Assembly: GCA_002269645.1 (NCBI GenBank)
Contig: NIVC01002928.1
Location: 1-64,000 of the forward strand
Length of the DNA: 64,000 nt
From: Macrostomum lignano
Lineage: Eukaryota
Direction of reading: 5' to 3'
The first letter of the stretch is position 1, and each line of letters opens with the position of its first letter. The notes under the pieces were generated by a model. The model searched no databases, was not told where the DNA came from, and saw nothing but the letters and a program-made list of their open reading frames with translations. Shown here piece by piece: positions 4,678 through 43,151 of this stretch. A program made the position numbers and the translations under genes.

Positions 4678-5238
4678 TTAAATCAAAACAGCTGGCTGCG
4701 TGGTACAACTAACGCCAACAACAACATCGGCAACATTATTGACAGCGGCAGTTTCAACCTCGACTTCGCCTTCGCCGTCGCCCTCGCTTTCGCTGACTGA
4801 CGGTGGCGATTTACGCTTGCTGCCGCCGACGACACCGCCGCCGGCGCTGCTGCACACGGCCGGATCCGTCAGGAATCGCCTGGCCAGAGCCACCCGGCAC
4901 AGCCGCTTGTTGCGCTCCGCCTCCTCGTAGACGAAGCCGCTGCCAACTCGCAAGCGCATCCGGGTGGCCGCCAGGGCGTCTGCGGCGGCAGCCACGTCGG
5001 GTGTCAACTGCGACTCTGTCGACGACGACATGGACTGCAGCATCTCGAACTTGACCGCCAGGCCCATGGAGGCGGCGGTCTCGTGCAGCTGGCGCACCGG
5101 GTTGCGGGGCGGCTCGGCCAGGAAGTCGCGCATCGGCTCCGACATGAGGCGGCGGATCAGCGACCAGGCGGCCGACAGCGACCAGCCGGAATCGGCGAAG
5201 ACGGCGCCAACCAGGGACTCGACTAGGTCGCCAAGAGC
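4678..5238 (-). CDS. dicer: Dicer exon 15 (RNase IIIb end, dsRBD, C-terminal tail)
   Basis: cccag|GCT CTT GGC GAC; (K)[18 protein letters not shown]; [11 protein letters not shown]; stop TAA at 4678. Confidence 0.93.
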   Translation of the reverse strand, partial: ALGDLVESLVGAVFADSGWSLSAAWSLIRRLMSEPMRDFLAEPPRNPVRQLHETAASMGLAVKFEMLQSMSSSTESQLTPDVAAAADALAATRMRLRVGSGFVYEEAERNKRLCRVALARRFLTDPAVCSSAGGGVVGGSKRKSPPSVSESEGDGEGEVEVETAAVNNVADVVVGVSCTTQPAVLI

Positions 5239-8200
5239 CTGGGTTGATTATGAGACGAGGAGGGCAGATGACACAAATAAAATTGGAAAGAAGTGACTCC
5301 AAACCACTCTTAAAACAACGAGATGTCACGATGCAAGTCATCAAAGAGTTGCTCAAGAGTCACGAGTCGTATCTGAGGCGTGCTTAGAGTCGCTATAGAG
5401 TCACTGGATTGTGTTTGAAGAAGCGCATTTGCGTCGCGCTTGTGACGCAACAGTTCGCCTCTCCGTCGCATTTGACGCGTTTTGAGTCGCTTAAAAAGTC
5501 GCAAGACTCGCCCCACAGTCGCTAGAGTCACCAGTGAGTTGTTTGCAACGACTTTTTAGTGATCATTGTCATGGTATCGTTTTTAACGGATACTCTACTC
5601 ATGCACACAATCACACAGGGTGTACAGCGACACCCTTCAACCGACTAAACTCATGACACAAACTCATATTCGTCCACAGTCTATTGGTCAAACTGTACAT
5701 ATCGGTAGTTACCGAACGTCCCTGGACTCACCTTGACGGCGGACAGACGGACAACCCGAGCTGCGTCGGCTCCAGCATCGGCCACGAACTGGTCGCTCAG
5801 CCTTCGGAACCGGTCCGGGCCATCGAACTGGGCGGCGCTTTCTCGATATTCCATAATGAGATCTTGCAGCGGCTCGTCCATCGAGAGCAGGTGCGACTCG
5901 AGGCCGTGTGACACGGCCACTGCGGCAAAGAGATTGTTGTTGGTCAGCGACATTCGGAGATCCGTGACGGCACCTGATTGAAGGAAATTTCAATAGCTAA
6001 TCAGAATACTCCAACTAAAATGGCAGCCAATCAGAATGATCTAACTGGAATGGCAGCCAATCAGAATGATATAACTGGAATGGCAGCCAATCAGAATGGT
6101 CCAACTGGAATGACAGCCAATCAGAATAGTCCAACTGGAATGACAGCCAATCAGAATAGTCCAACTGGAATGGCAGCCAATCAGAATGATATAACTGGAA
6201 TGGCAGCCAATCAGAATGGTCCAACTGGAATGACAGCCAATCAGAATAGTCCAACTGAAATGACAGCCAATCAGAATGGTCCAACTGGAATGACAGCCAA
6301 TCAGAATAGTCCAACTGGAATGACAGCCAATCAGAATAGTCCAACTGAAATGACAGCCAATCAGAATAGTCCAAATGGAATGACAGCCAATCAGAATGGT
6401 CCAACTGAAATGACAGCCAATCAGAATGGTCCAACTGAAATGACAGCCAATCAGAGTCACACGCGGGACTCACCCGGCGAGCCAGTGTCCATGCAGTCGC
6501 AGACAGCGTAATGCGTCACCAAATAATCAATAACGGCATCGCCAAGGAACTCCAATCGTTGGTAGCAGTCGGTCACGTGATTCCACGTGAATGTCGAGTG
6601 AGTCACAGCCGACAGGAGAAACTCTCGCCGACGAAACTTGTAGCCGAGCTTCACCTCCAGCTGGTCGAGATCCGCCATCCCCCAAAACTTAACAAAATCG
6701 GGTGATTCGACGCCGATTTCGCCCGGCAACAGAAGCGTCGTAGCGGCCGGTTCCGCCGGGGTCGGCAGCGAGGCCGATGGAACGCCGAGCCAGCGCAAGA
6801 AGGCGTCGGCGGCGTCGCCACCGCAGGCAGACAGGATGAGGCCAGTCAGAGCTTCGGCCACGTCAGCGACACTTTTGTCGGCCAAATTGCAGCACCAGCG
6901 TCGGTTGGCAGAGCTAGCGTCGGCGGTGGGGTCGGCGTCGGGTCGGGCGCACGGCGGCTGATAGTTCTCCGGCTTGTTGGCGTCCTGCATGCGTCGGAGC
7001 AGAAATTCTTCAGTGCCTCACCTTACCTAATTATTCCGTAGGTGACTTAAGTAGGTCCCCACCTGTCCATCACTAAGCCACACCTGTCCATCACTAAGCT
7101 ACATCTGTCCCTAACTAAGCCACACCTGTCCCTAACTAAGCTACATCTGTCCCTAATCAAGCCACACCTGTCCCTAATCAAGCCACACCTGTCCCTAATC
7201 AAGCCACACCTGTCCCTAATCAAGCCACACCTGTCCCTAATCAAGCCACACCTGTCCCTAATCAAGCCACACCTGTCCCTAATCAAGCCACACCTGTCCC
7301 TAACTAAGCCACACCTGTCCCTCACTAAGCCACACATGTCCCTAATCAAGCCACACCTGTCCCTAATCAAGCCACAGCTGTCCCTAACTAAGCCACATCT
7401 GTCCCTAATGAAGCCACACCTGTCCCTAATCAAGCCACACCTGTCCCTAATCAAGCCACACCTGTACCCAACCTACCTGAGCGAACACGAAGCGATGCAG
7501 ACGCTTCTCCTTGGCCGCACAGTGCAGGAAAGCATTGCGAATCTCACGCATTCGCAGCCGGGTGAGGCGGCCCTCCGACACGGTGTGGTCGCTATCATGG
7601 AACAGGCGGGTGCTGACGGTGAATTTCAGCCGAGCATCGCCCAGGGTCTCCAACAGCTCCATGCTGTGAAAGTCGTTGGCGTGGGTCAGCGTGACCGCTT
7701 GGAGGCAGCCGGTGAGGGTCAGACCTGACCCGCTGTCGGGGGAGCGGAAACTGGAGGGGGCAGGTGGGGGGGGGGGCGGAAGTGAAGTTGGCGCAACAAA
7801 AGATTTGGGAATGCGATTACATGCAATACTGTAGAGCAAGAGAAGTGAGGAGTCAGAGTGCGAAGTAAGGAATCAGAGTGCCAAGTAAGGCATCAGAGTG
7901 CCAAGTAAGGCATCAGAGTGCCAAGTAAGGCATCAGAGTGCCAAGTAAGGCATTTAGAGTGCCAAGTAAGGCATTAGAGTGCCAAGTAAGGCATTTAGAG
8001 TGCCAAGTGAGGTATCAGAGTGCCAAGTAAGGCATTTAGAGTGCCAAGTGGGGCATTTAGAGTGCCAAGTAAGGCATCAGAGTGCCAAGTAAGGTATTAG
8101 AGTGCCAAGTGAGGAGTCAGAGTGCCAAGTGATGAATCAGAGAGCCAAGTGAGGCATCAGAGTGCCAAGTGGGGCATCAGAGTGCCAAGTAGGGCATCAG

Positions 8201-11200
8201 AGTGCCAAGTAAGGCATCAGAGTGCCAAGTAAGGCATTTAGAGTGCCAAGTGAGGTATTAGAGTGACAAGTAAGGCATTTAGAGTGCCAAGTGAGGCATC
8301 AGAGTGCCAAGTGAGGCATCAGAGTGCCAAGTGAGGCATCAGAGTGCCAAGTGATCAGAGTGCCAAGTGAGGCATCAGAGTGCCAACTGAGGAGTCAGAG
8401 GGCCAAATGAGGCATTAGAGTGAATAGATAACCGTCAGCTAGTCTCACCCATTTGCAACAATCCATTCCATAACGTCAAACTTCATAAGAGCCCGCTGTT
8501 CCACAGACAGTTGCTGATCAGCCGCACGACTACAGCCAGAGTAGATAAGTCGCGGGTTCGAATCCACAGCGCAGCCAGTTGACAGCGGAGCCGATTGAAG
8601 CAGGGACATGAGCTCGCAGCCTAGCAGCAGCTGGTTAATCCGGTACACAATGGCTGGCATGGCTCTCAGCTGACACCAAAGTCGCACTTGAATGCCGGGC
8701 ATCGCCAAGAGGCGGCTAACCCGGTCAACGCTGGTCTTGTTCTGTCGAGATAGCAGGCGAGCCATGCGACCTTTGGCTGCATTGGGGTTGTACACCAGAG
8801 CGTCCAGATGGGGCGTGCGGCTGAACTCAACCAGGCCGTTGGGTCGGATAGAGGTCACATAGTGCCTGGGGTGGCCGGGTTGCCAGGATTTTAAAATTGC
8901 TATTCTTTATAAGTAACAGATTCTTAGGTAGTTTATAGGGTAGATTCTCTGTGGTAATTTATAGGGTAGATTCTGTGGTAGTTTATGGGGTAGATTCACT
9001 ATGGTAGTTTATGGGGTAGATTCTCTGTGGTAGCTTATGGGGTAGATTCTCTATGGTAGTTTATGGGGTAGATTCTCTGTGGTAGTTTATGGGGTAGATT
9101 CACTATGGTAGTTTATGGGGTAGATTCTCTGTGGTAGCTTATGGGGTAGATTCTCTATGGTAGTTTATGGGGTAGATTCTCTATGGTAGTTTATGGGGTA
9201 GATTCTCTATGGTAGTTTATGGGGTAGATTCTCTGTGGTAGCTTATGGGGTAGATTCTCTATGGTAGTTTATGGGGTAGATTCTCTATGGTAGTTTATGG
9301 GGTAGATTCTCTGTGGTAGTTTATGGGGTAGATTCTCTGTGGTAGTTTATGGGGTAGATTCTCTGTGGTAGTTTATGGGGTAGATTCTCTGTGGTAGTTT
9401 ATGGGGTAGATTCTCTATGGTAGTTTATGGGGTAGATTCTCTGTGGTAGTTTATGGGGCAGATTCTCTGTGGTAGTTTATGGGGCAGATTCTCTGTGGTA
9501 GTTTCTGGGGTAGATTCTCTGTGGTAGTTTATGGGGTAGATTCTCTATGGTAGTTTATGGGGTAGATTCTCTGTGGTAGCTTATGGGGTAGATTCTCTAT
9601 GGTAGTTTATGGGGTAGATTCTCTATGGTAGTTTATGGGGTAGATTCTCTGTGGTAGTTTATGGGGTAGATTCTCTGTGGTAGTTTATGGGGTAGATTCT
9701 CTGTGGTAGTTTATGGGGTAGATTCTCTGTGGTAGTTTATGGGGTAGATTCTCTGTGGTAGTTTATGGGGTAGATTCTCTGTGGTAGTTTATGGGGTAGA
9801 TTCTCTATGGTAGTTTATGGGGTAGATTCTCTGTGGTAGTTTATGGGGCAGATTCTCTGTGGTAGTTTATGGGGTAGATTCTCTGTGGTAGTTTATGGGG
9901 TAGATTCTCTGTGGTAGTTTATGGGGTAGATTCTCTATGGTAGTTTATGGGGCAGATTCTCTGTGGTAGTTTATGGGGCAGATTCTCTATGGTAGTTTAT
10001 GGGGCAGATTCTCTGTGGTAGTTTATGGGGTAGATTCTCTGTGGTAGTTTCTGGGGTAGATTCTCTGTGGTAGTTTATGGGACAGATTCTCTGTGGTAGT
10101 TTGTACTCACCAGGACTTTGTCCCCCTGTCCTGCAGCCGCTGTACCAGAACTCCAGGCTTCAGCACGTCGCGATTGGCAGCGACCTCCACAATGGCCGGT
10201 CCAATCAGTGGGTCCGGGCTGGTCAGGTGGCTGAGCAGGTCCCAGTCTATACTGCCATTGGGCTGGTTGTCTAAATCGCTCCGAACCACCGCAATCAGCT
10301 GACAGATGGGCTCCACAGCTCCGTCTGGGTGCTCTGATTCTGCCTCATTGGGGCTGTCATGGGGAAGGAAGTCAATTTAATTATTATTAAACCGATATGT
10401 TTCGTACAACACGTTTTTTAGGGAAACAAAAACTGTTTATACTAGGGAGGGTTGAAGCCTAGTGGTTAGAGCGTCGGACTCACGGCTGAAAGGTCGGGGG
10501 TTCGATTTCTTTCTGCCCGTCGAACTACTAAGGGAAGATTTTGAGAGAACTAAAGAGACTAGCTAAGGATGTCCGGCAGTTTAGGTTTGCCCCATTATTG
10601 AGAAGCTTGATAAAAAAATCTGACATAGTCGCAACAGGACGTTCATAGTCGTCTGGTGTCCTCTTTTGAAGGTTCAGAAGCACCGCCTGGGTAAAAAGCC
10701 AGTGACCAAGAAAGTCAGAGCTGATGCAAACTGTTTTACTGTTAATTTATGGAGGGCTGAAGCAACTATTAATTGAGATTCCTAAGAACATGTCTACCAT
10801 CATCCGCGTGCTGTTCAGAGTAATAATAATGATAATGATAATAATAATTGATTATTATCAGCTGTGACAGTAAATCTTCAGATCTGCCTTAGTGAGCAGA
10901 TGTGCAACCGACAGCTCAGCCGCAGCTATTGCGCGGTGCATCTGAAGGCTGCGTACGGCTGTTCAGTCCAAGGACTGGGGGGTCGCCACACACAGCCTCA
11001 ATTACCCCAGCTAATGCTGGCACCCATTTTACAGCTGGGAGAACTGAAGCAATGCAGAGTTGAGTTGTCTTGCTCAAGGATACAAATTGTTCCAGTAGGA
11101 TCGGGAATCGAACCCCCGACCTTCCAGTCGTGAGTCTGACGCTCCAACCACTAGGCTACAACCCCCCTTCCTCCTCCCTTCCTTCCGGACGCACCCGCCG

Positions 11201-12379
11201 CCGCTAGGAGGCCAATAAAATCTCAGGCCCTTCATCTGCACCGGCTCGTGCCACCGCAGCATCAGGCGGGTCAGAGGCGCCTGGGCGGCAACCAGCTGGG
11301 CCAGTTGACCCTCCGTCAGCCTCAGCGCCTGGCCGGGTCCTGGACGGAATTCGGCCGGCTCGCATCCGAGAAACAGCGGAAAAGCGAGGCTGTCGGGTAG
11401 CGGAGCGCCGCAGGTAAGCAGGGCGGGCTGCCAGTCGCAGGGGGGCAGGTGAAGGCCCGGCAGCTTCACGTCCAGCCTGTGACAGTAGAACAGTGGAGCT
11501 GCTGTTGAGGTGTGGCTGTCGCTGCCACTGTCGAAGGCAATCTGGTGCCCGATGGCAGCTGAGGAGCTGCTGGCTCTGGCGACGGGTTTCGGCAGCCAGG
11601 CGTGACGGCCGCGCGTGCCCTGCAAGGCATGAGACGTGTGGAGAATTTGTGCTGTACAAATCTTGGTGAAGGGGGATTTCAAGCAAGTGAATCTGGGGCC
11701 GTGGAGTCGTGGAATCTCGGAAAGATGGAATTTTGGAGAATCTCCGGAAAGAGGGAATTTCGGAGAACCTCGAAAAGAGAGAATTTTATAAGAATCTTGG
11801 GAAGGGGGAATTAAGAGAATCTTGGGAAGGGGGAATTAAGAGAATCTTGGGAATGGGGAATTAAGAGAATCTTGGGAAGGGGGAATTAAGAGAATCTTGG
11901 AGAGGAAATTTAGGAAAACCTTGAAAAGAGGAGATTTAGAAGAATCTAAGAAATAGGGAAATTCCGAGAATATTGAAAGGTGAATTTCTGAAAAAGCTTT
12001 TAAAGGCAATAGACAGTGGTTTTGGAAAATCAATCTCAGTGTCACCTGTCCCGGCTCGTAGCTGCGCAGTTCTTCCACGGCGCAGCGAGCCTCCCGCTCA
12101 CTCGGCAGCAGGTGATCGTCCAGTTCGCCCGTCTTGTGCAGGAGGCGCACCGCCTCCAGAGCGGCAGATCGTCTGGCATCATCGGCGGAGAGTCGGTCAC
12201 CCCGGCACTGCACCGGCTGCACAATGGGGCAGGGCCTGGGCAGGAACAGGCGGCAGCGATAGCGGCCCGAGGTTGGGTTCAGCGCGGTGTCGAAGTACGG
12301 CGATGGGGGCCTGGTGCAGCCCATGGAGGCCAGCCTAGTGGTGTACCTAAGCGGTTGGAGAATCAGTCGGATGTTACTG

Positions 12380-12428
<49 letters not shown>

Positions 12429-12457
12429 GCTTGTCTGTCTGTCTGTCTGTCTGTCTG

Positions 12458-12518
<61 letters not shown>

Positions 12519-12680
12519 GTCTGTCTGTCTGTCTGTCTGTCTGTCAGTCAGTCTGTCTGCTTGTCTGTCTGTCTGTCAGTCAGTCTGTCTGCTTGTCTGT
12601 CTGCCTGTCTGTCTGTCTGTCTGTGTCTGTCTGTCTGTCTGTCAGTCAGTCTGTCTGCTTGTCTGTCTGTCTGTCAGTCA

Positions 12681-12724
<44 letters not shown>

Positions 12725-15700
12725 GCATGTCTGTCTGCCTGTCTGTCTGTCTGTCTGTCTGCATGTCTGTCTGCCTGCCTGTCTGTCTGTCTGTCTGTCT
12801 TTGTCTTTTATAAAAACTGCAGGTCGGCAGTCATGTCAGAGCACACACCGGTTAATCAGGCTCACGGCAGTCTTCAGCCCGACTTTGGCTCCGGTAGAGG
12901 CCACTTCGTAATAAGCCGGGTGATCGCTCCGGACGCTCAGGTCCAGCGGTGCGGCGCCTTCGCTGGCGTCAGCTGTTGAAGCCGTCGCCCCTGATTCGTC
13001 GGGCTGAATGGATTAAGAAGAAGTGCAGATCCATGACTCAACAGTCGCCTCTCCGTCGCTTTATAGCCGCTTCAGTCATTAAAAAGTTACAAGAGTCGCC
13101 CCAGAGTCTCTAGGGTCACCAGTGAGTTGTTAGCAATGACTCTTTAGCGATTCTTGTCACTGTAACGTTCTCAAAGGAGATATTCTAGACCATTTAAACT
13201 CATTTTAATACAGAGAATCGAATTCAAAACAATCCCTATCTCATAGTCATATCCCAAACCAAAAGCGATTGCCTCCATTATCATTTCATTCCTTTTCTTA
13301 GCACCAGAGGCGCCAGCACCAGAGGCGCCAGCACCAGAGGCGCCAGCACCAGAGGCGCCAGCACCAGAGGCACCAGCACCAGAGGCGCCAGCACCAGAGG
13401 CGCCAGCACCAGAGGCGCCAGCACCAGAGGCGCCAGCACCAGAGGCGCCAGCACCAGAGGCGCCAGCACCAGAGGCGCCAGCACCAGAGGCGCCAGCACC
13501 AGAGGCGCCAGCACCAGAGGCGCCAGCACCAGAGGCGCCAGCACCAGAGGCGCCAGCACCAGAGGCGCCAGCACCAGAGGCGCCAGCACCAGAGGCGCCA
13601 GCACCAGAGGCGCCAGCACCAGAGGCGCCAGCACCAGAGGCGCCAGCACCAGAGGCGCCAGCACCAGAGGCGCCAGCACCAGAGGCGCCAGCACCAGAGG
13701 CGCCAGCACCAGAGGCGCCAGCACCAGAGGCGCCAGCACCAGAGGCGCCAGCACCAGAGGCGCCAGCACCAGAGGCGCCAGCACCAGAGGCGCCAGCACC
13801 AGAGGCGCCAGCACCAGAGGCGCCAGCACCAGAGGCGCCAGCACCAGAGGCGCCAGCACCAGAGGCGCCAGCACCAGAGGCGCCAGCACCAGAGGCGCCA
13901 GCACCAGAGGCACCAGCACCAGAGGCACCAGCACCAGAGGCGCCAGCACCAGAGGCGCCAGCACCAGAGGCGCCAGCACCAGAGGCGCCAGCACCAGAGG
14001 CGCCAGCACCAGAGGCGCCAGCACCAGAGGCGCCAGCACCAGAGGCGCCAGCACCAGAGGCGCCAGCACCAGAGGCGCCAGCACCAGAGGCGCCAGCACC
14101 AGAGGCGCCAGCACCAGAGGCACCAGCACCAGAGGCGCCAGCACCAGAGGCACCAGCACCAGAGGCGCCAGCACCAGAGGCGCCAAAGCGAGTGTCTTAC
14201 CTCAGAGTCCTCATCCGACATGGCATCAAAAGCGGCCCGCATTTTAAGCAGGCTGCGTTGAACCGCTTCGTCCAGCCACTGATAATAGACCAGCTTGGAC
14301 TTGCAGTCGTTCTCCTCGTCCTCATTTACCAGCATAACGTAACGCGACTTAACAGCTCTGGCGCGTCCTTTCGACTGGACGTAGGAACGAAACTCTGGCG
14401 GGAAGTTGAACTTCACGACCAGATTGCACTGCCGGACGTTCATGCCTTCCTCGATGACTCGGGTGGCAATGAGTGTGTTGACTTCTCCTGTGCGGAACTG
14501 CTTGAGCACGCGGTCCTGCTGGGATAGAGACATCGCCACCTGGTTTGACTGCTCGCTGGACAGGCCGTGACCGGTGACGAACTCAGGCCGGAGGAAGCTC
14601 AGGTCGCTTTTGTAGCCGGTCATCTTTTAATTGGCGTAGCAACAAAACTCGACAGTTATTTTAGGCTATTTCCAGATCCCCGATGCTTGATTTCCAAATC
14701 CCAAATACCAGATGCTTGATTTTCAAGTCCCAAATATCAGATGCTTGATTTCCTGATCCCAAATACCAGATGCTTAATTCCAGATCCCAAATACCAGATG
14801 CTTGATTCGAGATCCCAGATCTCAGATGCTAGATCCCAAACACTAGATGCTTGATTCCAGATCCCAAATACCAGATGCTTGATTCCAGATCCCAAATACC
14901 AGATGCTTGATTCCAGATCCCAAATACCAGATGCTTGATTCCAGATCCCAAATACCAGATGCTTGATTCGAGATCCCAGATCTCAGATGCTAGATCCCAA
15001 ACACTAGATGCTTGATTCCAGATCCCAAATACCAGATGCTTGATTCGAGATCCCAGATCTCAGATGCTAGATCCCAAACACTAGATGCTTGATTCCAGAT
15101 CCCAAATACCAGATGCTTGATTCGAGATCCCAGATCTCAGATGCTAGATCCAAAATACTAGATGCTTGATTCCAGATCCCAAATACCAGATGCTTGATTC
15201 GAGATCCCAGATCTCAGATGCTAGATCCCAAACACTAGATGCTTGATTCCAGATCTCAAATACCAGATGCTTGATTCCAGATCCCAAATACCAGATGCTT
15301 GATTCGAGATCCCAGATCTCAGATGCTAGATCCCAAACACTAGATGCTTGATTCCAGATCTCAAATACCAGATGCTTGATTCCAGATCCCAAATACCAGA
15401 TGCTTGATTCGAGATCCCAGATCTCAGATGCTAGATCCCAAACACTAGATGCTTGATTCCAGATCTCAAATACCAGATGCTTGATTCCAGATCCCAAATA
15501 CCAGATGCTTGATTCGAGATCCCAGATCTCAGATGCTAGATCCCAGACACTAGATGCTTGATTCCAGATCCCAAATACCAGATGCTTGATTCCAGATCCC
15601 AAATACCAGATGCTTGATTCGAGATCCCAGATCTCAGATGCTAGATCCCAAACACTAGATGCTTGATTCCAGATCTCAAATACCAGATGCTTGATTCCAG

Positions 15701-18700
15701 ATCCCAAATACCAGATGCTTGATTCGAGATCCCAGATCTCAGATGCTAGATCCCAAACACTAGATGCTTGATTCCAGATCTCAAATACCAGATGCTTGAT
15801 TCCAGATCTCAAATACCAGATGCTTGATTCCAGATCCCAAATACCAGATGCTTGATTCGAGATCCCAGATCTCAGATGCTAGATCCCAAACACTAGATGC
15901 TTGATTCCAGATCTCAAATACCAGATGCTTGATTCCAGATCCCAAATACCAGATGCTTGATTCGAGATCCCAAATACCAGATGCTTGATTCGAGATCCCA
16001 GATCTCAGATGCTAGATCCCAAACACTAGATGCTTGATTCCAGATCTCAAATACCAGATGCTTGATTCCAGATCCCAAATACCAGATGCTTGATTCGAGA
16101 TCCCAGATCTCAGATGCTAGATCCCAAACACTAGATGCTTGATTCCAGATCTCAAATACCAGATGCTTGATTCCAGATCCCAAATACCAGATGCTTGATT
16201 CGAGATCCCAGATCTCAGATGCTAGATCCCAAACACTAGATGCTTGATTCCAGATCTCAAATACCAGATGCTTGATTCCAGATCCCAAATACCAGATGCT
16301 TGATTCGAGATCCCAGATCTCAGATGCTAGATCCCAAACACTAGATGCTTGATTCCAGATCTCAAATACCAGATGCTTGATTCCAGATCCCAAATACCAG
16401 ATGCTTGATTCGAGATCCCAGATCTCAGATGCTAGATCCCAAACACTAGATGCTTGATTCCAGATCTCAAATACCAGATGCTTGATTCCAGATCCCAAAT
16501 ACCAGATGCTTGATTCGAGATCCCAGATCTCAGATGCTAGATCCCAAACACTAGATGCTTGATTCCAGATCTCAAATACCAGATGCTTGATTCCAGATCC
16601 CAAATACCAGATGCTTGATTCCAGATCTCAAATATCAGATGCTTGATTCCAGATCCCAAATACCAGATGCTTGATTCCAGATCCCAAATACCAGATGCTT
16701 GATTCCAGATCCCAAATACCAGATGCTTGATTCCAGATCCCAAATACCAGATGCTTGATTCCAGATCCCAAATACCAGATGCTTGATTCCAGATCCCAAA
16801 TACCAGATGCTTGATTCCAGATCCCAAATACCAGATGCTAGATTGCAAAGACGAACTTGCACACAAACAGTAACTGCACCAACCTCGCACATGAACTCCT
16901 TCACAGCCATCGCAATGACCCGCTCCTGTGTGAACACCACGGCTCTGAAAGCCTCACCATCCGGCAGTTCTTTGTGATGTTTTATCAGCGAATCCATCAG
17001 CTTCAGACACTTCTCCGAGCACAGATCCTCAGGAGTCTGGGCTGATAGCGCCTTCAGCTTGTACTGCTCAGATGCATCCAGCAGAATCTGTTGCGTCTCT
17101 TTTAAAGCGTCCTGCTCTTCCGGTTTCAGCGGCCCGGATGCGCCCTGAATGACATCGCTCAGCTCCTTGACATACATCTGCATCACCCGGAAGCAGCAGA
17201 AGTGGCCGAGCTCTTTCAGCGAGCTCAGCGAATCCGACAGGGCTCGGTGGCATCTGCGAAACGGCGACTCGCTTGAGCCTGAGCCTGGGGCTGGCGATTC
17301 GAATTTGAAATGCGGAAATGTTATTCACACAAAATATAGAATACAGTACTCGTATATACCAGCGCTAGGGCGGCAATTCTGAACTGGTTATCCCAGTGTC
17401 TAATCCTCCACAGGTTTGGATTATCCCAGTGTCTAATCCTCCACAGGTTTGGATTATCCCAGTGTCTAATCCTCCACAGGTTTGGATTATCCCAGTGTCT
17501 AATCCTCCACAGGTTTGGATTATCCCAGTGTCTAATCCTCCACAGGTTTGGATTATCCCAGTGTCTAATCCTCCACAGGTTTGGATTATCCCAGTGTCTA
17601 ATCCTCCACAGGTTTGGATTATCCCAGTGTCTAATCCTCCACAGGTTTGGATTATCCCAGTGTCTAATCCTCCACAGGTTTGGATTATCCCAGTGTCTAA
17701 TCCTCCACAGGTTTGGATTATCCCAGTGTCCAATCCTCCACAGGTTTGGATTATCCCAGTGTCTAATCCTCCACAGGTTTGGATTATCCCAGTGTCTAAT
17801 CCTCCACAGGTTTGGATTATCCCAGTGTCTAATCCTCCACAGGTTTGGATTATCCCAGTGTCTAATCCTCCACAGGTTTGGATTATCCCAGTGTCTAATC
17901 CTCCACAGGTTTGGATTATCCCAGTGTCTAATCCTCCACAGGTTTGGATTATCCCAGTGTCTAATCCTCCACAGGTTTGGATTATCCCATTGTCTAATCC
18001 TCCACAGGTTTGGATTATCCCAGTGTCTAATCCTCCACAGGTTTGGATTATCCCAGTGTCGAATCCTCCACAGGTTTGGATTATCCCAGTGTCTAATCCT
18101 TCAAAAATTTGGATTATCCCAGTGTCTAATCTTTAAAAAGATCGAATTATTTCAGTGTCTAATCCACAACAATATCGGATTATCCCAGTGTCTAATCCAC
18201 AACAGGATCGGATTATCATAGTGTCTAATATTTCATAGCATTGGATTATCCCAGTGTCTAATCCTCCCTAGCATCGGATTAACCCAGTGACTAATCCTTT
18301 ATAGGATCGGATTATCCTAGTGTCTAATCCCCCATAGGATCGGATTATTTCAGTGTCTAATCCCCCATAGGATCGGATTATCCCAGTGTTTAATCCTTTA
18401 TAGAATCATATTCTTAAAAAACTCAACAAACGTGACCTTAAGCCGAATTGATCAGCAATATTTGGTGATGCAATGCTTCACATGACTTCAAACCCATCTG
18501 ATTAAATATGATTAATAATTTGATCTGAAGCGACTAACCGGAGCTCCGACCCCTCGAACTCCGACCCGAATTAGCTCTGCCGTTATCTAATCGCTGTTTA
18601 GCGTCAGCCAGGGAGCGGCACAGCAGCAGGTAGATCGGGTCGCTGATGGTCTCGGACTTCTCCTCCTCAGTGCTGTACAGCGGCTTGTAGAGCAGCGTCT

Positions 18701-21411
18701 CTTCGCTGCAGCGGAGTCGAAATCCTTCGGCCTCCTGGTGGGTGGAGGTGACGATGCGAGCGTCCAGCATCTTCCGCTGCAGTTCATCAAGTCGCTCCTG
18801 AAATGTCGCAACAGGTAGGTTAAAAAATTCACTTTTAGGGCTTAGAAATTAAGCTAGAACAATAGAAATGGGCAAATAGGCAGGGCCTAGAATAGTATAA
18901 GCAGCGTAGCAACGGAGGGGTGGACATACATGATCTTGAAGCCCACGGTGTTTTTGTTTGTTTGGAGGCAGAAGATCGCATTATATCACTCAGTCATTAG
19001 GACTCAGGATTCTCAGCACCTAATAATTCATAAGATCGGATTATCCCAGTGTCTAATCCTTCATAAGATTGGATCATCCCAGTGTCTAACCCTCCATAGC
19101 AACGGATTATCCCTGTATCTAAAACGTTAAAGAATCGGATTATCCCAGAGTCTAATCCTTCCTAGGATCGGATTATCCCAGAGTCTAATCCTTCCTAGGA
19201 TCGGATTATCCCAGAGTCTAATCCTTCCTAGGATCGGATTATCCCAGAGTCTAATCCTTCATAAGATTGGATTATCCCAGTGTCTAACCCTCCATAGCAA
19301 CGGATTATCCCTGTATCTAAAACGTTAAAGAATCGGATTATCCCAGAGTCTAATCCTTCCTAGGATCGGATTATCCCAGAGTCTAATCCTTCCTAGGATC
19401 GGATTATCCCAGAGTCTAATCCTTCCTAGGATCGGATTATCCCAGAGTCTAATCCTTCATAAGATTGGATCATCCCAGTGTCTAACCCTCCATAGCAACG
19501 GATTATCCCTGTATCTAAAACGTTAAAGAATCGGATTATCCCAGAGTCTAATCCTTCCTAGGATCGGATTATCCCAGAGTCTAATCCTTCCTAGGATCGG
19601 ATTATCCCAGAGTCTAATCCTTCCTAGGATCAGATTATCCCAGTGTCTAATACATTAAAGCATCGGATTATCACACTATCTAATCCCTACCTGCAGCTTG
19701 TTCCGCTTGATGTTGCCATTAAACAGACAGGCGGTAAGGCCAACCAGCCGCATTCCAGTCCGATCCCAGCCTTTCTGAGACATCTCCAACAGGCGCTGAC
19801 AGATTGCGGCATAGGCATCGCCCTTGTCAAGGTGATGACACTCGTCCAGAACTAGCAGAGACACCCAGTGAGGCCTGGCCTTGGCGTGGTTGAGAAGGTC
19901 CTTGAAAATGTCGGCAGTCATCACCAGGACCCGGTGCTGCTCAAACATCTGACGCCATTTGTCGCCTGCCCAGAGGTCGATCATTTCGCCGCCCATGTCG
20001 CCAATGAATTCGCCAACGTCCTTGGAATCTTGGGCGGTGAACAGGCAGCGGCGAATCTCTGCGGCCTGCTGGCGGACCAGCGGCACTGGAGAGCAGCAGA
20101 AACAGGTGGCTGAGTGAGGGCTGAGGTGGCTGAGTGAGGGCTGAGGTGGCTGAGTGAGGGCTGAGGTGGCAGAGTGAGGGCTGAGGTGGCTGAGTGAGGG
20201 CTGAGGTGGCTGAGTGAGGGCTGAGGTGGCTGAGTGAGGGCTGAGGTGGCTGAGTGAGGGCTGGGGTGGCTGACTGAGGGCTTTGGTGGATGAGTGAGGG
20301 CTGAGGTGGCTGAGTGAGGGCTGGGGTGGCTGACTGAGGGCTGAGGTGGCTGAGTGAGGGCTGGGGTGGCTGACTGAGGGCTTTGGTGGATGAGTGAGGG
20401 CTGAGGTGGCTGAGTGAGGGCTGAGGTGGCTAAGTGAGAGCTGAGTTGGCTGAGTGAGAGCTGAGTTGGCTGAGGGCTGGGGTGGCTGACTGAGGGCTTT
20501 AGTGGATGAGTGAGGGCTGAGGTGGCTGAGTGAGGGCTGAGGTGGCAGAGTGAGGGCTGAGGTGGCTGAGTGAGGGCTGAGGTGGCTGAGTGAGGGCTGA
20601 GGTGGCTGAGTGAGGGCTGAGGTGGCTGAGTGAGGGCTGGGGTGGCTGACTGAGGGCTTTGGTGGATGAGTGAGGGCTGAGGTGGCTGAGTGAGGGCTGG
20701 GGTGGCTGACTGAGGGCTGAGGTGGCTGAGTGAGGGCTGGGGTCAGTGGGGTGGCTGACTGAGGGCTTTGGTGGATGAGTGAGGGCTGAGGTGGCTGAGT
20801 GAGGGCTGAGGTGGCTGAGTGAGGGCTGAGGTGGCTGAGTGAGAGCTGAGTTGGCTGAGGGCTGGGGTGGCTGACTGAGGGCTTTAGTGGATGAGTGAGG
20901 GCTGAGGTGGCTGAGTGAGGGCTGAGGTGGCTGAGTGAGGGCTGAGGTGGCTGAGTGAGAGCTGAGTTGGCTGAGGGCTGGGGTGGCTGACTGAGGGCTT
21001 TGGTGGATGAGTGAGGGCTGAGGTGGCTGAGTGAGGGCTGAGGTGGCTGAGTGAGGGCTGAGGTGGCTAAGTGAGAGCTGAGTTGGCTGAGGGCTGGGGT
21101 GGCTGAGTGAGGGCTTTGGTGGCTAAGTCAAGATTGGGTTTGTCAGTTCGCCTACCCTAAAAAAGGACTTTATAAACAAATACTAGAAGGCCAACTCACC
21201 ATTCTTCACCAGAAACACACACCGTTGACCGCCCTTGTCCAATTCAATTCGAGAGTTGGCCAGATAATACCGAATAAGCATAACGGAGATGAAAGTCTTG
21301 CCGCTGCCCGTGTCAAGCTTCACTATGATGTTGCGCTTGATGCCTTCGCTGGCGATGTCAATCTGAGGCGGGGGCAGTTAGGCAGGCAGATGCAGATGGA
21401 CAGAGAGACAA

Positions 21412-21460
<49 letters not shown>

Positions 21461-21602
21461 CAAAGACAGACAGACAGACAGCCAATAGGACATATAGACA
21501 CGAAGCCATTACAAGCTTTACCTGATATTGCCGAGGTGCATAGACAGGTGCAGCTTGCTGGTTTTGGTAATTTTCCCCATTGGCATCAGAATTGGTTTCC
21601 AT
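4678..21602 (-). CDS. dicer: Dicer (RNase III endoribonuclease), 15 coding exons, 1642 aa; helicase-DUF283-platform-degenerate PAZ-RNase IIIa-RNase IIIb-dsRBD
   Basis: Exons: 21522-21602, 21200-21362, 19691-20085, 18539-18797, 16884-17284, 14201-14623, 12849-13003, 12046-12346, 11195-11619, 10111-10353, 8449-8865, 7477-7828, 6474-6984, 5732-5973, 4678-5238. All are GT-AG bounded with matching phases and sum to 4929 nt (1643 codons). Motifs: [59 protein letters not shown]. Confidence 0.96.
5732..5973 (-). CDS. dicer: Dicer exon 14 (RNase IIIb middle)
   Basis: aatcag|GT; [21 protein letters not shown] (PGxLTDLRSALVNN-like); donor AAG|GTGAGT. Confidence 0.92.
5995..6455. repeat. 30-bp minisatellite (Dicer intron 13)
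   Basis: AATCAGAATAGTCCAACTGGAATGACAGCC, about 15 copies. Confidence 0.95.
6474..6984 (-). CDS. dicer: Dicer exon 13 (RNase IIIa C-terminal half and RNase IIIb N-terminal half)
   Basis: [14 protein letters not shown]; [16 protein letters not shown]...[17 protein letters not shown]; donor G|GTGAGT. Confidence 0.96.
7060..7465. repeat. 21-bp minisatellite (Dicer intron 12)
   Basis: CTGTCCCTAATCAAGCCACAC. Confidence 0.95.
7477..7828 (-). CDS. dicer: Dicer exon 12 (RNase IIIa, N-terminal half)
   Basis: [11 protein letters not shown]...[12 protein letters not shown]...EGRLTRLR; donor CAG|GTAGGT. Confidence 0.93.
7855..8420. repeat. About 20-bp minisatellite (Dicer intron 11)
   Basis: AGAGTGCCAAGTAAGGCATC. 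Confidence 0.95.
8449..8865 (-). CDS. dicer: Dicer exon 11 (degenerate PAZ and connector helix)
   Basis: ccccag|G CAC TAT; [19 protein letters not shown] resembles the Dicer connector LWxxxxxLPSILYRxxxLL; donor GG|GTGAGA. Confidence 0.88.
8925..10102. repeat. 26-bp minisatellite (Dicer intron 10)
   Basis: GGTAGATTCTCTGTGGTAGTTTATGG. Confidence 0.95.
10111..10353 (-). CDS. dicer: Dicer exon 10 (platform end / PAZ start)
   Basis: gacag|C CCC AAT; ...GSIDWDLL... (Dicer IDW/IDF motif); donor TG|GTGAGT. Confidence 0.85.
10446..10512 (+). mobile_element. SINE family A head fragment
   Basis: AGCCTAGTGGTTAGAGCGTCGGACTCACGGCTGAAAGGTCGGGGGTTCGATT matches the head of the family A copies, in the opposite orientation. 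Confidence 0.75.
10886..11166 (-). mobile_element. tRNA-derived SINE family A, copy 1 (Dicer intron 9), CORE/Meta-like central domain
   Basis: A box TAGCCTAGTGG, B box GGTTCGATTCC, central GTATCCTTGAGCAAGAC...CTGTAAAATGGG; near-identical second copy at 55862-56130; (AAT)n-like run just beyond the 3' end. Confidence 0.85.
11195..11619 (-). CDS. dicer: Dicer exon 9 (platform region)
   Basis: ttgcag|GGC ACG CGC; [11 protein letters not shown]...[13 protein letters not shown]; donor GG|GTGCGT. Confidence 0.85.
11791..11900. repeat. 25-bp minisatellite (Dicer intron 8)
   Basis: AGAATCTTGGGAAGGGGGAATTAAG, about 4 copies. Confidence 0.9.
12046..12346 (-). CDS. dicer: Dicer exon 8 (DUF283 dimerisation domain)
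   Basis: [25 protein letters not shown]; ttag|G phase 2; donor CAG|GTGACA. Confidence 0.95.
12380..12805. repeat. (GTCT)n microsatellite (Dicer intron 7)
   Basis: Imperfect GTCT tetranucleotide run. Confidence 0.95.
12849..13003 (-). CDS. dicer: Dicer exon 7 (start of DUF283)
   Basis: ttcag|CCC GAC; ...[21 protein letters not shown]; donor CG|GTGTGT. Not in the ORF track. Confidence 0.88.
13301..14184. repeat. 15-bp minisatellite (Dicer intron 6)
   Basis: AGAGGCGCCAGCACC, highly homogeneous. Confidence 0.97.
14201..14623 (-). CDS. dicer: Dicer exon 6 (helicase C-terminal, motifs V-VI)
   Basis: [40 protein letters not shown]...[10 protein letters not shown]; donor GAG|GTAAGA. Confidence 0.95.
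14670..16840. repeat. 28-bp minisatellite with a 105-bp higher-order repeat (Dicer intron 5)
   Basis: Monomer ATGCTTGATTCCAGATCCCAAATACCAG; higher-order unit 28+28+28+21. Confidence 0.95.
16884..17284 (-). CDS. dicer: Dicer exon 5 (Hel2i/Hel2, motif IV)
   Basis: ccccag|GC phase 1 (alternative in-frame acceptor 6 nt downstream); LKELGHFC...[11 protein letters not shown]...RAVVFTQER; donor GAG|GTTGGT. Confidence 0.85.
17385..18395. repeat. 33-bp minisatellite (Dicer intron 4)
   Basis: GGATTATCCCAGTGTCTAATCCTCCACAGGTTT. Confidence 0.95.
18539..18797 (-). CDS. dicer: Dicer exon 4 (Hel1/Hel2i)
   Basis: tttcag|GAG CGA CTT; [18 protein letters not shown]...; donor G|GTTAGT. Confidence 0.85.
19015..19688. 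repeat. 33-bp minisatellite, same family as intron 4 (Dicer intron 3)
   Basis: GGATTATCCCAGAGTCTAATCCTTCCTAGGATC. Confidence 0.95.
19691..20085 (-). CDS. dicer: Dicer exon 3 (helicase motifs Ia-III)
   Basis: [31 protein letters not shown]; donor CAG|GTAGGG. Confidence 0.95.
20106..21125. repeat. 20-bp minisatellite (Dicer intron 2)
   Basis: GGTGGCTGAGTGAGGGCTGA. Confidence 0.95.
21200..21362 (-). CDS. dicer: Dicer exon 2 (helicase motif I)
   Basis: cctcag|ATT GAC...; translates [31 protein letters not shown]...VFLVKN; donor G|GTGAGT. Not in the ORF track. Confidence 0.92.
21398..21484. repeat. (GACA)n microsatellite (Dicer intron 1)
   Basis: GACA run. Confidence 0.9.
21522..21602 (-). CDS. 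dicer: Dicer exon 1 (METNS...APRQYQ, helicase Q-motif)
   Basis: ATG at 21602; PRQYQ followed by donor CAG|GTAAAG; phase 0. Confidence 0.8.
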
Positions 21603-42450: not shown

Positions 42451-43151
42451 CATTACCATAATCCCACACCTATTTCACGCCAATGCAATGCCAAGATAGA
42501 GAGGTAAGATAGAAAGCAGTCACGTTATAAAATTTGTACATGGAATACATGTACATTGTTGGGGAGCAGCTGTGAAAAAAAATGTGAAACCGAATTGCCT
42601 ATTGTGTCTGAGTAAAAGTATACAGTACAATGTTATTGAAAATATTAATATTGATAATAATATAGGAAGTGCAATACTCGTATATCTTGCTCTGCAGTTA
42701 ATATTGTTATTATTAACTCACAGGCACAGATGGTGCACGCGCAAAGACACTTTAGACACTGTAGGCTGAAGGGGGGTGTCAACCACCCAAACCCTGCAGT
42801 TCAAGTCGATCATATAGATAAGAAAATTTGCGCGCACCAAAATTTATTATTTTCATCGATCATACTCACATTTTCTGAGAGAGCTGGCGTGTTATATTAT
42901 ATAAGTACTCTGGCACAGACTGCATAGGCCGCCCTCTGACCCCCCCTCCCCCCGTTGTGCCTCTCTTTACTCTCAGTGGGCAGTTTTGAGTCGAGGCGGT
43001 CTTATCAGCTAGCTTTGAAAAAAGGGGGAAAGAGGCCGTTTCTTTGCTTGAGCGCGAAGAGAGCAGCCGAAACCGAATATTAGCTGGCTATAATTCTCAA
43101 GTCACCACCGCGACCGCCTTTGCATTGCATGCGGCAGCATTGCCAGGCCTC

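What the first reader, a model, noticed from the sequence alone, without database searches (positions are those of the whole stretch)
8449..10353. Dicer with an intact helicase and RNase III core but an internally deleted PAZ domain
Seen: between the IDWDLL motif (exon 10) and the connector [19 protein letters not shown] (exon 11) there are only about 109 aa. The segment reads [37 protein letters not shown]. Known: canonical animal Dicer PAZ has, after the YV strand, a module of the type [30 protein letters not shown] that builds the 3'-overhang pocket; by my recollection the equivalent human stretch is roughly 45-50 aa longer. That module is absent here. The gap falls inside exon 11, so a missed exon in intron 10 would not easily explain it. 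Helicase motifs I, II and VI and all eight RNase III acidic residues ([14 protein letters not shown]; RLEFLGD/GDLVES) are retained. Inference: an ATP-dependent, Dicer-2-like enzyme that may load dsRNA via the helicase rather than a PAZ pocket and may set product length differently.
Basis: partly seen in the sequence, partly recalled or inferred. Interest (0 to 1): 0.75.

Follow-up and report, generated by a model that had tools for sequence, protein, structure and literature searches.

The report
Flatworm Dicer-2 with a vestigial PAZ
This is one of three copies of the Dicer-2 gene of the flatworm Macrostomum lignano: its RNA-end-binding PAZ domain has shrunk to an unrecognisable 102-residue stub while its helicase motor and cutting sites are intact, a real but modest addition to the known loss of PAZ in flatworm Dicer-2 enzymes.

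Summary
On the minus strand, exon 10 (10353-10111) and exon 11 (8865-8449) join unambiguously. They encode ...IDWDLL...TKSW|[14 protein letters not shown]...[19 protein letters not shown]. Only 102 residues lie between the platform anchor and the connector helix, against 131-168 in other Dicers (human 149).

The gene is Macrostomum lignano BOX15_Mlig002075. It has three near-identical copies and a transcript-based GenBank annotation. Fontenla et al. 2021 already list it as the species' Dicer-2.

Pfam finds helicase, Dicer-dimer and two RNase III domains but no PAZ. The 102-residue stub alone shows no PAZ profile similarity. None of the six human 3'-pocket residues survives. Intron 10 is a 26-bp minisatellite in all three copies, and no hidden exon exists.

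The loss is lineage-specific. A polyclad Dicer-2 still has a Pfam-detectable PAZ. M. lignano Dicer-1 has a canonical PAZ but degenerate helicase motifs.

The copies are under purifying selection (pN/pS about 0.1). Helicase-driven loading of dsRNA and altered length measurement are plausible but untested.

PAZ-less flatworm Dicer-2 proteins are already reported at the domain level. I therefore class this as a new, well-resolved member of a known kind. Interest is moderate.

The parts
4678..21602 (-). Dicer-2 gene (BOX15_Mlig002075-type copy), 15 coding exons, 1616-1618 aa
   Evidence: Splice-site reconstruction. Identical to GenBank PAA54342.1 apart from one 2-aa acceptor choice. Pfam finds ResIII/DEAD, Helicase_C, Dicer_dimer and 2x Ribonuclease_3.
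10111..10353 (-). Exon 10: end of the platform, the IDWDLL anchor and the first 41 residues of the PAZ vestige; ends ...GTKS + TG of Trp949
8866..10110 (-). Intron 10 (phase 2); positions 8927-10102 are a 26-bp tandem repeat of 45 copies
   Evidence: TRF. The same repeat fills the intron in the two other gene copies, with 22 and 37 copies. It has no coding capacity and no PAZ-like tblastn hit.
8449..8865 (-). Exon 11: [14 protein letters not shown]..., the rest of the PAZ vestige, the connector helix and the linker to RNase IIIa
10233..10250 (-). IDWDLL anchor motif (aa 903-908), conserved at the platform/PAZ boundary in Dicers
   Evidence: alignments; coordinates
10111..10232 (-). PAZ vestige, first part (aa 909-949)
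   Evidence: Y936 and R937 of human Dicer correspond to L and Q here. AF2 pLDDT is below 50.
8682..8865 (-). PAZ vestige, second part (aa 949-1010); the helix carrying the equivalents of Y971/Y972/K975/Y976 is absent
8625..8681 (-). Connector (ruler) helix [19 protein letters not shown] (aa 1011-1029)
   Evidence: Conserved with all Dicers aligned. AF2 predicts a helix with pLDDT about 62-72.
11257..11493 (-). Platform-like domain (aa 769-847)
   Evidence: AF2 predicts a beta-sheet plus helix with pLDDT 65-80. Cassette-level hhalign to canonical Dicers gives 96% probability. No Pfam Dicer_platform hit.
21294..21308 (-). Helicase motif I, GSGKT
19835..19846 (-). Helicase motif II, DECH
14357..14377 (-). 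Helicase motif VI, QSKGRAR
12091..12346 (-). Dicer dimerisation (DUF283) domain, main part (aa 626-711; the first residues lie in exon 7, 12849-12868)
   Evidence: Pfam PF03368, E 1.7e-15; coordinates
7636..7659 (-). RNase IIIa signature ELLETLGD
6850..6867 (-). RNase IIIa second acidic pair, ADVAEA
6538..6558 (-). RNase IIIb signature RLEFLGD
5215..5232 (-). RNase IIIb second acidic pair, GDLVES
4870..5103 (-). C-terminal dsRBD-like tail (NPVRQLHE ... [14 protein letters not shown])
   Evidence: Aligns end to end with the tail of polyclad DCR-2. No Pfam dsrm hit.

Best explanation
The window carries one of three near-identical, expressed copies of Macrostomum lignano Dicer-2 (BOX15_Mlig002075).

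Shown:
- The enzyme keeps a RIG-I-like helicase with intact ATPase motifs, the DUF283 domain, a platform-like domain, the connector helix, both RNase III catalytic centres and a dsRBD-like tail.
- The PAZ position holds only a 102-residue vestige. It is 29-66 residues shorter than in other Dicers and has no detectable PAZ similarity.
- It lacks the helix/hairpin sub-module and all six residues that form the 3'-overhang pocket in human Dicer.
- The loss happened in the Macrostomum lineage. A polyclad Dicer-2 still has a PAZ, and M. lignano Dicer-1 has the reciprocal pattern: canonical PAZ with degenerate helicase motifs I and II.

Inferred mechanism:
- miRNA precursors are handled by Dicer-1 through its PAZ.
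- Dicer-2 takes up long dsRNA through its helicase-DUF283 ring in an ATP-dependent, threading and processive mode, as Drosophila Dicer-2 does. It cannot anchor a 2-nt 3' overhang in a PAZ pocket.
- Product length must therefore be set by something other than the 3' pocket, such as the platform/connector remnant or the helicase-to-active-site geometry.
- The uncharacterised, high-complexity ~20-nt small-RNA class reported for this worm is a candidate product.
For: Identity:
- 100% match to GenBank M. lignano proteins.
- Listed as DCR-2 and placed in the Dcr-2 grade of the published tree, with DCR-1 being Mlig011615.
- Best local match is polyclad Pvi60657 DCR-2, at 539 bits against 460 for amphioxus Dicer.

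Intact domains: Pfam and motif checks.

PAZ loss:
- No PF02170 hit at E<=10, whereas Pvi DCR-2 (31.7 bits) and Mlig Dcr-1 (66 bits) do hit.
- 102 residues against 131-168, and 4 aromatic residues against 9-19 in the eight full-length PAZ regions compared (7 in the similarly shortened Varroa protein).
- Y936 and R937 correspond to L and Q; Y971, Y972, K975 and Y976 fall in the gap.
- The vestige alone against a PAZ profile gives 0.2% probability.
- phmmer of the cassette against 1.84 billion representatives finds only M. lignano.
- AF2 pLDDT is below 50 across aa 914-1005, while the platform and connector are modelled.

Not an artefact:
- Three loci share the same junction and the same minisatellite intron.
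- No hidden module is found.
- The GenBank CDS comes from RNA-seq-guided transcript assembly.

Functional gene: pN/pS is 0.10-0.11 overall and 0.19-0.23 in the cassette. That is still below neutrality (Fisher p 0.002-0.005).

Reciprocal Dcr-1.

Mechanistic background: two entry routes, PAZ or helicase ring, with ATP-dependent processive dicing. PAZ inactivation in Dcr-2 alters siRNA length. The ~20-nt class is reported.
Against: - No biochemical or small-RNA evidence links this protein to any activity.
- Failure to detect PAZ by sequence is known to be unreliable. S. pombe and N. crassa Dicers have no recognisable PAZ sequence, yet a PAZ-like fold is predicted for S. pombe.
- The AF2 model used only 16 sequences, so low confidence in the vestige may reflect the poor alignment rather than lack of fold.
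- In Drosophila Dicer-2 the PAZ-platform still receives the threaded end in the dicing state. Helicase loading does not by itself make PAZ dispensable.
- Helicase motif V reads EEGMNV instead of EEGxDV. The effect on ATPase activity is unknown.
- The vestige is still under purifying selection, so it does something.
Confidence: 0.6

Rival explanations
1. The PAZ is not lost but extremely diverged. The 102-residue segment still folds into a compact PAZ-like (OB-like barrel) domain that anchors dsRNA ends with different residues, as proposed for fungal Dicers.
For: The review by Zapletal et al. 2023 notes that S. pombe and N. crassa PAZ cannot be recognised by sequence, yet a PAZ-like fold is predicted for S. 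pombe. The vestige is under purifying selection (pN/pS about 0.2). It keeps a local match to polyclad DCR-2 ([15 protein letters not shown] against LVEVCRLPTLHDTAVY). By eye the sequence has several beta-strand-like stretches.
Against: Once the ~27-residue Dicer-specific helix region is subtracted, the segment is too short for a full PAZ. The Pfam model has 123 positions, and the polyclad hit spans 143 residues. It has only 2 Tyr and 4 aromatic residues in total. None of the pocket residues is kept. AF2 gives pLDDT below 50 and no barrel.
Confidence: 0.2
2. Annotation or assembly artefact: a real exon encoding the PAZ helix/hairpin module is hidden in, or collapsed out of, the repeat-filled intron 10, or is used in an alternative isoform.
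For: One defensible alignment places the gap exactly at the exon 10/11 junction. Minisatellite introns are prone to assembly collapse.
Against: Three independently assembled loci show the same junction. Each intron 10 runs as repeat from 8 nt after the donor to about 61 nt before the acceptor. The 26-bp unit cannot keep a reading frame. tblastn with four PAZ modules finds nothing credible in the window or either paralogous locus. The GenBank CDS derives from RNA-seq and a de novo transcriptome.
Confidence: 0.03
3. A decaying or non-catalytic paralogue: the gene is on its way to pseudogenisation, or acts only as a dsRNA-binding or sensor scaffold rather than as a dicing enzyme.
For: Constraint on the platform-PAZ-connector cassette is relaxed about four-fold. 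Branches are very long in the published tree. Helicase motif V carries a D-to-N change.
Against: The reading frames are intact across 15 exons in all three copies. Synonymous changes far outnumber non-synonymous ones (20:6, 10:3, 26:9). All eight RNase III acidic residues and helicase motifs I, II and VI are kept. A transcript-based annotation shows it is expressed.
Confidence: 0.07
4. RdRP-coupled Dicer: the enzyme receives dsRNA directly from an RNA-dependent RNA polymerase, as reported for S. pombe Dcr1 and Tetrahymena Dcr2 (my own knowledge). End recognition by PAZ became dispensable for that reason, rather than because of free helicase loading.
For: M. lignano is one of the few flatworms that keeps RdRP genes. 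RdRP products are blunt long dsRNA, the preferred helicase substrate. The polyclad that keeps PAZ has no detected RdRP.
Against: Cestodes and trematodes lack RdRPs yet also have reduced Dcr-2 proteins, so the correlation is not clean. No interaction data exist. This explanation also overlaps with, rather than excludes, the main one.
Confidence: 0.1

Closest known systems
Flatworm Dicer-2 orthologues (Prostheceraeus vittatus Pvi60657, Echinococcus multilocularis EmuJ_000181800, Schmidtea SMESG000073604; Fontenla et al. 2017, 2021)
   Same: Same orthology group in the published tree and tables. It is 33% identical to Pvi60657 over the helicase and DUF283 region, and 32% from the end of the PAZ region to the C-terminus. 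The architecture is the same: helicase, DUF283, two RNase III domains. Absence of a PAZ HMM hit is already reported for cestode and most lophotrochozoan Dicer-2.
   Different: Pvi60657 still scores as PAZ in Pfam (31.7 bits) and keeps HYR...FEEYFYKRYG. The cestode protein lacks a Pfam hit but keeps the helix module SYLDYAKFKHG and has 168 residues at this position. M. lignano has 102 residues, no helix module and no pocket residue.
Drosophila melanogaster Dicer-2 (PDB 6BUA, 7W0A-F)
   Same: It is an siRNA-class Dicer with conserved helicase motifs I, II and VI. The helicase region matches at E about 1e-67. It is the model for ATP-dependent threading of long dsRNA.
   Different: Drosophila Dicer-2 has a sequence-detectable PAZ (E 6e-7 to a canonical PAZ). 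It uses its PAZ/platform pockets for 21-nt length fidelity. The M. lignano protein has no such pocket.
M. lignano Dicer-1 (BOX15_Mlig011615)
   Same: Paralogue in the same genome with the same overall Dicer architecture.
   Different: The pattern is reciprocal. Dicer-1 has a canonical PAZ (VPSYRNF...FEEYYLKKYN; Pfam 66 bits), but motif I reads QSCID and motif II reads LENSDL.
Fungal Dicers without recognisable PAZ sequence (S. pombe Dcr1, N. crassa DCLs)
   Same: Helicase-containing Dicers whose PAZ is invisible to sequence methods (fungal hits also lack PF02170). They act on RdRP-made dsRNA.
   Different: A PAZ-like fold is still predicted for S. pombe. They are not animal proteins and share no ancestry for the loss.
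Varroa destructor Dicer-like isoform X3 (P0008)
   Same: An animal Dicer with helicase and platform Pfam hits but no PAZ hit. It has only 95 residues at the PAZ position, and its gap covers the same hairpin/helix module.
   Different: It is a chelicerate lineage, so the reduction is independent. It is 26% identical to the M. lignano protein. It has not been studied functionally as far as I found.
Budding-yeast Dcr1 (Kluyveromyces polysporus; my own knowledge)
   Same: It makes siRNAs without a PAZ ruler.
   Different: It lacks the helicase, has a single RNase III domain and works as cooperating homodimers from the inside of the duplex outward. Its architecture is quite unlike the protein here.

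Membership tests
Dicer (eukaryotic class 4 RNase III) | Tandem RNase IIIa and IIIb domains with both acidic pairs in each | tested here: met
   PF00636 scores 99 bits with two stretches. [14 protein letters not shown] and RLEFLGD/GDLVES are present.
Dicer (eukaryotic class 4 RNase III) | N-terminal RIG-I-like DExD/H helicase | tested here: met
   ResIII, DEAD and Helicase_C hits. 329 bits to the reconstructed ancestral Dicer helicase AncD1D2. Motifs I, II and VI are intact.
Dicer (eukaryotic class 4 RNase III) | Dicer dimerisation / DUF283 domain | tested here: met
   PF03368, E 1.7e-15, aa 620-711.
Dicer (eukaryotic class 4 RNase III) | Platform-PAZ-connector cassette | tested here: inconclusive
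   The cassette as a whole aligns to canonical Dicers (hhalign 96%). AF2 models a platform and a connector helix, and Foldseek top hits are Dicers. The PAZ part fails every test.
Dicer (eukaryotic class 4 RNase III) | C-terminal dsRBD | tested here: inconclusive
   No Pfam dsrm or Dicer dsRBD hit. The tail aligns to that of polyclad DCR-2 and carries a KKxAKxxAA-like [14 protein letters not shown].
Metazoan Dicer-2 clade | Groups with Dicer-2 rather than Dicer-1 or Drosha | tested here: met
   The published ML tree places Mli02075g1 between 'turbellarian' Dcr-2 and Dme_dcr2, and Mli11615g2 inside Dcr-1. It is listed as DCR-2. Its best score here is to polyclad DCR-2. I built no tree of my own.
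Metazoan Dicer-2 clade | ATP-dependent processive dicing of long dsRNA | not testable with these tools
   Only motif conservation can be seen. Motif V has N in place of the usual D.
PAZ domain (PF02170) | Match to the family profile | tested here: not met
   No hit at E<=1 on the whole protein or at E<=10 on the region. hhalign of the vestige against a PAZ-only profile gives 0.2%. Positive controls hit: Pvi DCR-2 at 31.7 bits and Mlig Dcr-1 at 66 bits.
PAZ domain (PF02170) | 3'-end pocket residues (human Y936, R937, Y971, Y972, K975, Y976; PMC13171623) | tested here: not met
   Y936 and R937 correspond to L and Q. The other four fall in the gap in every alignment. Only 2 Tyr occur in the 102 residues.
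PAZ domain (PF02170) | Helix plus beta-hairpin sub-module flanking the barrel | tested here: not met
   Nothing corresponds to TFxEYYxxKY...L. The region is 29 residues shorter than in the closest orthologue and 47 shorter than in human.
PAZ domain (PF02170) | OB-like beta-barrel core | tested here: inconclusive
   AF2 pLDDT is below 50 with short helices predicted, from an alignment of only 16 sequences.
Non-canonical PAZ-less Dicers of budding yeast type | Single RNase III domain acting as a homodimer, with no helicase | tested here: not met
   Two RNase III domains and a full helicase are present.

The most novel reading that the evidence does not exclude
M. lignano has split the two ways a Dicer can engage RNA between its two paralogues. 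Dicer-1 keeps only the PAZ route. Dicer-2 keeps only the helicase route and has discarded the 3'-overhang pocket, perhaps because RdRPs hand it blunt dsRNA. It would then be a natural, genetically tractable animal Dicer that measures product length without a PAZ anchor. It would be responsible for the worm's uncharacterised ~20-nt high-complexity small RNAs.
Probability: 0.25. Interest if true: 0.6.

Novelty: new member of a known kind. Interest (0 to 1): 0.4.

Why it matters
The accepted model holds that Dicer product length equals the distance from the PAZ-anchored end to the RNase III centres. In Drosophila Dicer-2, PAZ-pocket mutations degrade length fidelity.

An expressed, selectively maintained animal Dicer-2 with a working-looking helicase but no PAZ pocket gives a natural test of how much of dicing and measuring can be done by the helicase route alone. 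M. lignano has RNAi by soaking and transgenesis, so the test is practical.

The significance is limited. Reduced or PAZ-less Dicer-2 proteins are already described for flatworms and other lophotrochozoans. This gene is already catalogued as DCR-2. Nothing here shows function.

Tried and rejected
- phmmer of the platform-PAZ-connector region against PDB sequences found nothing at E<=10.
- phmmer of the same region against 1.84 billion representatives returned only frameshifted M. lignano predictions.
- A second word-indexed homologue search without the helicase returned almost nothing. Low-complexity words probably soaked up the candidate list.
- The AF2 run on aa 727-1180 with 16 sequences gave mean pLDDT 51.6. 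It was usable only for the platform, connector and RNase IIIa.
- The Foldseek search confirmed 'Dicer' but at TM about 0.3, too weak for residue-level conclusions.
- Hidden-exon search: the best tblastn hit was E 0.39 in intron 9 (10579-10701). It lies upstream of exon 10, so it is in the wrong order, and I rejected it as chance.
- I considered whether this could be the worm's only Dicer, because Fontenla 2017 listed no DCR-2 for M. lignano. I rejected this: the 2021 tables give DCR-1 = Mlig011615 and DCR-2 = Mlig002075.
- I did not build my own phylogeny. The identity percentages printed are wrong because of an indexing slip and are not used. The bit scores from that call are correct.
Full report
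**What is at the coordinates.** The gene lies on the minus strand. Between the two coding blocks only three in-frame GT..AG pairs exist. The canonical pair CTG|GTGAGTAC ... CCCCAG|GCA clearly scores best. It joins ...QDRGTKSW to [14 protein letters not shown]..., with the Trp codon split across the intron. I rebuilt the whole gene as 15 exons from 21602 to 4678, encoding 1616 aa. Intron 10 (8866-10110) consists almost entirely of a 26-bp tandem repeat with 45 copies.

**Whose gene it is.** The protein is 100% identical over its length to 'hypothetical protein BOX15_Mlig002075g4 [Macrostomum lignano]'. Two further copies, g1 and g2, sit in the same 90% cluster. The window matches g2 (PAA54342.1) except for a 2-aa acceptor choice in exon 5. 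That GenBank annotation was made from an RNA-seq-guided transcript assembly (PMC5730564). The exon 10/11 junction and expression therefore already have transcript support.

**Domains.** Pfam finds ResIII/DEAD, Helicase_C, Dicer_dimer and two Ribonuclease_3 stretches. It finds no PAZ and no Dicer_platform even at E<=1. All of the following are present:
- helicase motifs I (GSGKT), II (DECH) and VI (QSKGRAR);
- the four acidic pairs of RNase IIIa and IIIb.

Against solved structures the whole protein matches vertebrate Dicer, the reconstructed ancestral Dicer helicase, plant DCL1, and Drosophila Dcr-1 and Dcr-2.

**The PAZ position.**
- From the conserved IDW-type anchor to the LW of the connector helix there are 102 residues. 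The comparison values are 131 in polyclad Dicer-2, 134 in a crab Dicer, 146-149 in amphioxus, cockroach and human Dicer, 162 in M. lignano Dicer-1 and 168 in cestode Dicer-2. The segment has 4 aromatic residues, against 9-19 in those eight proteins and 7 in the similarly shortened Varroa protein.
- In multiple alignments the stretch corresponding to human [28 protein letters not shown] is missing.
- A 2026 structural paper gives the human 3'-pocket residues as Y936, R937, Y971, Y972, K975 and Y976 (PMC13171623). I checked the numbering against the 5ZAK sequence. Here Y936 and R937 align to L and Q, and the other four fall in the gap.
- The cassette as a whole is still recognisably Dicer-like (hhalign 96%). 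The 102 residues alone show no similarity to a PAZ-only profile (0.2%).
- phmmer of the cassette against 1.84 billion representative proteins finds only M. lignano sequences.
- AlphaFold2 with a thin alignment models a platform-like sheet (pLDDT 65-80), the connector helix (about 62-72) and RNase IIIa. It leaves aa 914-1005 below pLDDT 50. Foldseek returns Dicers but with low TM-scores.

**Not an artefact, not a pseudogene.**
- I fetched the two other loci. All 15 exons are 98-100% identical.
- Intron 10 is the same 26-bp repeat with 22 and 37 copies.
- tblastn with the PAZ modules of four Dicers finds no hidden exon in the window or either paralogous locus.
- Between copies, synonymous differences outnumber non-synonymous ones 20:6, 10:3 and 26:9. 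pN/pS is 0.10-0.11 overall.
- In the platform-PAZ-connector cassette pN/pS is 0.19-0.23. This is higher than the 0-0.08 elsewhere but still significantly below neutrality.

**Where the gap lies.** MAFFT puts it inside exon 11, after RPNG or after LVEF. BLAST against the closest orthologue instead aligns [14 protein letters not shown] with RYGTHISLNNNLPLVEV, the strand after the missing helix. A global pairwise alignment agrees. On that reading the gap coincides with, or lies just upstream of, the exon 10/11 junction. The loss could then have been the loss of an exon or exon end. That is an inference I could not test. In every alignment the Tyr-rich helix is absent.

**What kind of Dicer.** Fontenla et al. 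2017 listed no DCR-2 for M. lignano in the older assembly. Their 2021 paper lists BOX15_Mlig002075 as DCR-2 and BOX15_Mlig011615 as DCR-1 (PMC8191739). Their deposited tree places Mli02075g1 between the 'turbellarian' Dcr-2 group and Drosophila Dcr-2, and places Mli11615g2 inside Dcr-1. From their supplementary sequences I took three proteins:
- Polyclad Pvi60657 DCR-2. It is the best match to the window protein (539 bits against 460 for amphioxus Dicer; 33% identity). It keeps a Pfam-detectable PAZ with HYR...FEEYFYKRYG.
- Cestode Emu0181800 DCR-2. It has no Pfam PAZ hit but still keeps the helix module.
- M. lignano Dcr-1. It has a textbook PAZ (66 bits), but motif I reads QSCID and motif II reads LENSDL.

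The loss is therefore specific to the Macrostomum lineage. The two paralogues show reciprocal degeneration.

**How it probably works (inference).** The review literature describes two entry points for dsRNA: the PAZ, or the helicase-DUF283 ring. The ring route allows ATP-dependent processive dicing (PMC10328071). PAZ-pocket defects in Drosophila Dicer-2 change siRNA length. With Dicer-1 available for pre-miRNAs, Dicer-2 most plausibly loads long dsRNA through its helicase and cannot anchor a 2-nt 3' overhang. Length must then be set in another way. M. lignano keeps RdRPs, which make blunt dsRNA. Its small-RNA profile includes an uncharacterised high-complexity ~20-nt class (PMC4604429). These are leads, not evidence.

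**Main caveat.** Sequence-invisible PAZ domains can still fold as PAZ, as predicted for S. pombe. My structural test was weak. I give that rival about 20%. The shortness of the segment and the lack of aromatic residues argue against a complete PAZ.

**Novelty.** Absence of a PAZ hit in flatworm and other lophotrochozoan Dicer-2 proteins is published, and this gene is already catalogued. New here:
- the loss in M. lignano is a genuine genomic and transcript-level feature in three loci;
- it is lineage-specific relative to a PAZ-bearing polyclad orthologue;
- it removes every pocket residue while the helicase and nuclease stay intact;
- the paralogous Dicer-1 shows the opposite pattern.

I class it as a new member of a known kind, of moderate interest.

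Noticed in passing
window 4678-21602 (introns of the Dicer-2 gene), e.g. 5995-6455, 7060-7465, 7853-8422, 8927-10102, 13300-14185, 14682-16844, 17388-18397, 19020-19686, 20104-21128: Nearly every intron is filled by its own minisatellite, with periods of 15-33 bp and up to 80 copies. Copy number differs between the three gene copies (intron 10: 45, 22 and 37 copies). The rest of the window is similarly rich in such arrays. This fits the published figure of 15% simple and tandem repeats in this genome.
   Followed up: partly
window 10446-10507 and 11106-11167 (intron 9): An inverted pair of 62-nt tRNA-like (SINE-like, A/B-box bearing) elements, 90% complementary and 598 nt apart. It could form a hairpin in the pre-mRNA of a Dicer gene. 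ARAGORN and Rfam call nothing here.
   Followed up: partly
M. lignano Dicer-1 (Mli11615g2; sequence from the supplementary alignment of PMC8191739, not in the window): Dicer-1 of the same species has a canonical PAZ but degenerate helicase motifs I (QSCID) and II (LENSDL). This is the mirror image of the Dicer-2 in the window.
   Followed up: partly
P0008 (Varroa destructor endoribonuclease Dicer-like isoform X3): A mite Dicer with helicase and platform Pfam hits has only 95 residues at the PAZ position and no PAZ hit. This looks like an independent reduction of the same module.
   Followed up: partly
window 14447-14479 region (aa 486-496, helicase motif V): Motif V reads [11 protein letters not shown], where the polyclad orthologue and the Dicer consensus have EEGxDV. 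It is a D-to-N change whose effect on ATPase activity is unknown.
   Followed up: no
window 7750-7828 and 17284-17290: Alternative acceptors lie close together. The transcript-based GenBank CDS uses 7750, and uses 17290 rather than 17284 for exon 5 (adding 2 aa).
   Followed up: yes
window 27664-28848 (-), 43044-44186 (+), 62865-63950 (-): Neighbouring coding blocks are a protein kinase domain (PF00069, E 7e-34), a galactosyltransferase (PF01762, E 3e-16) and the C-terminal part of an amiloride-sensitive sodium channel (PF00858, E 2e-23). The kinase also sits next to the Dicer-2 gene in both paralogous loci.
   Followed up: partly
aa 855-1064 of the protein (window about 8520-11230): Five of the six amino-acid differences, and eight of the twenty synonymous differences, between this copy and copy g4 fall in the platform-PAZ-connector region. 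Either this segment diverges faster, or the rest of the gene is homogenised between copies.
   Followed up: partly
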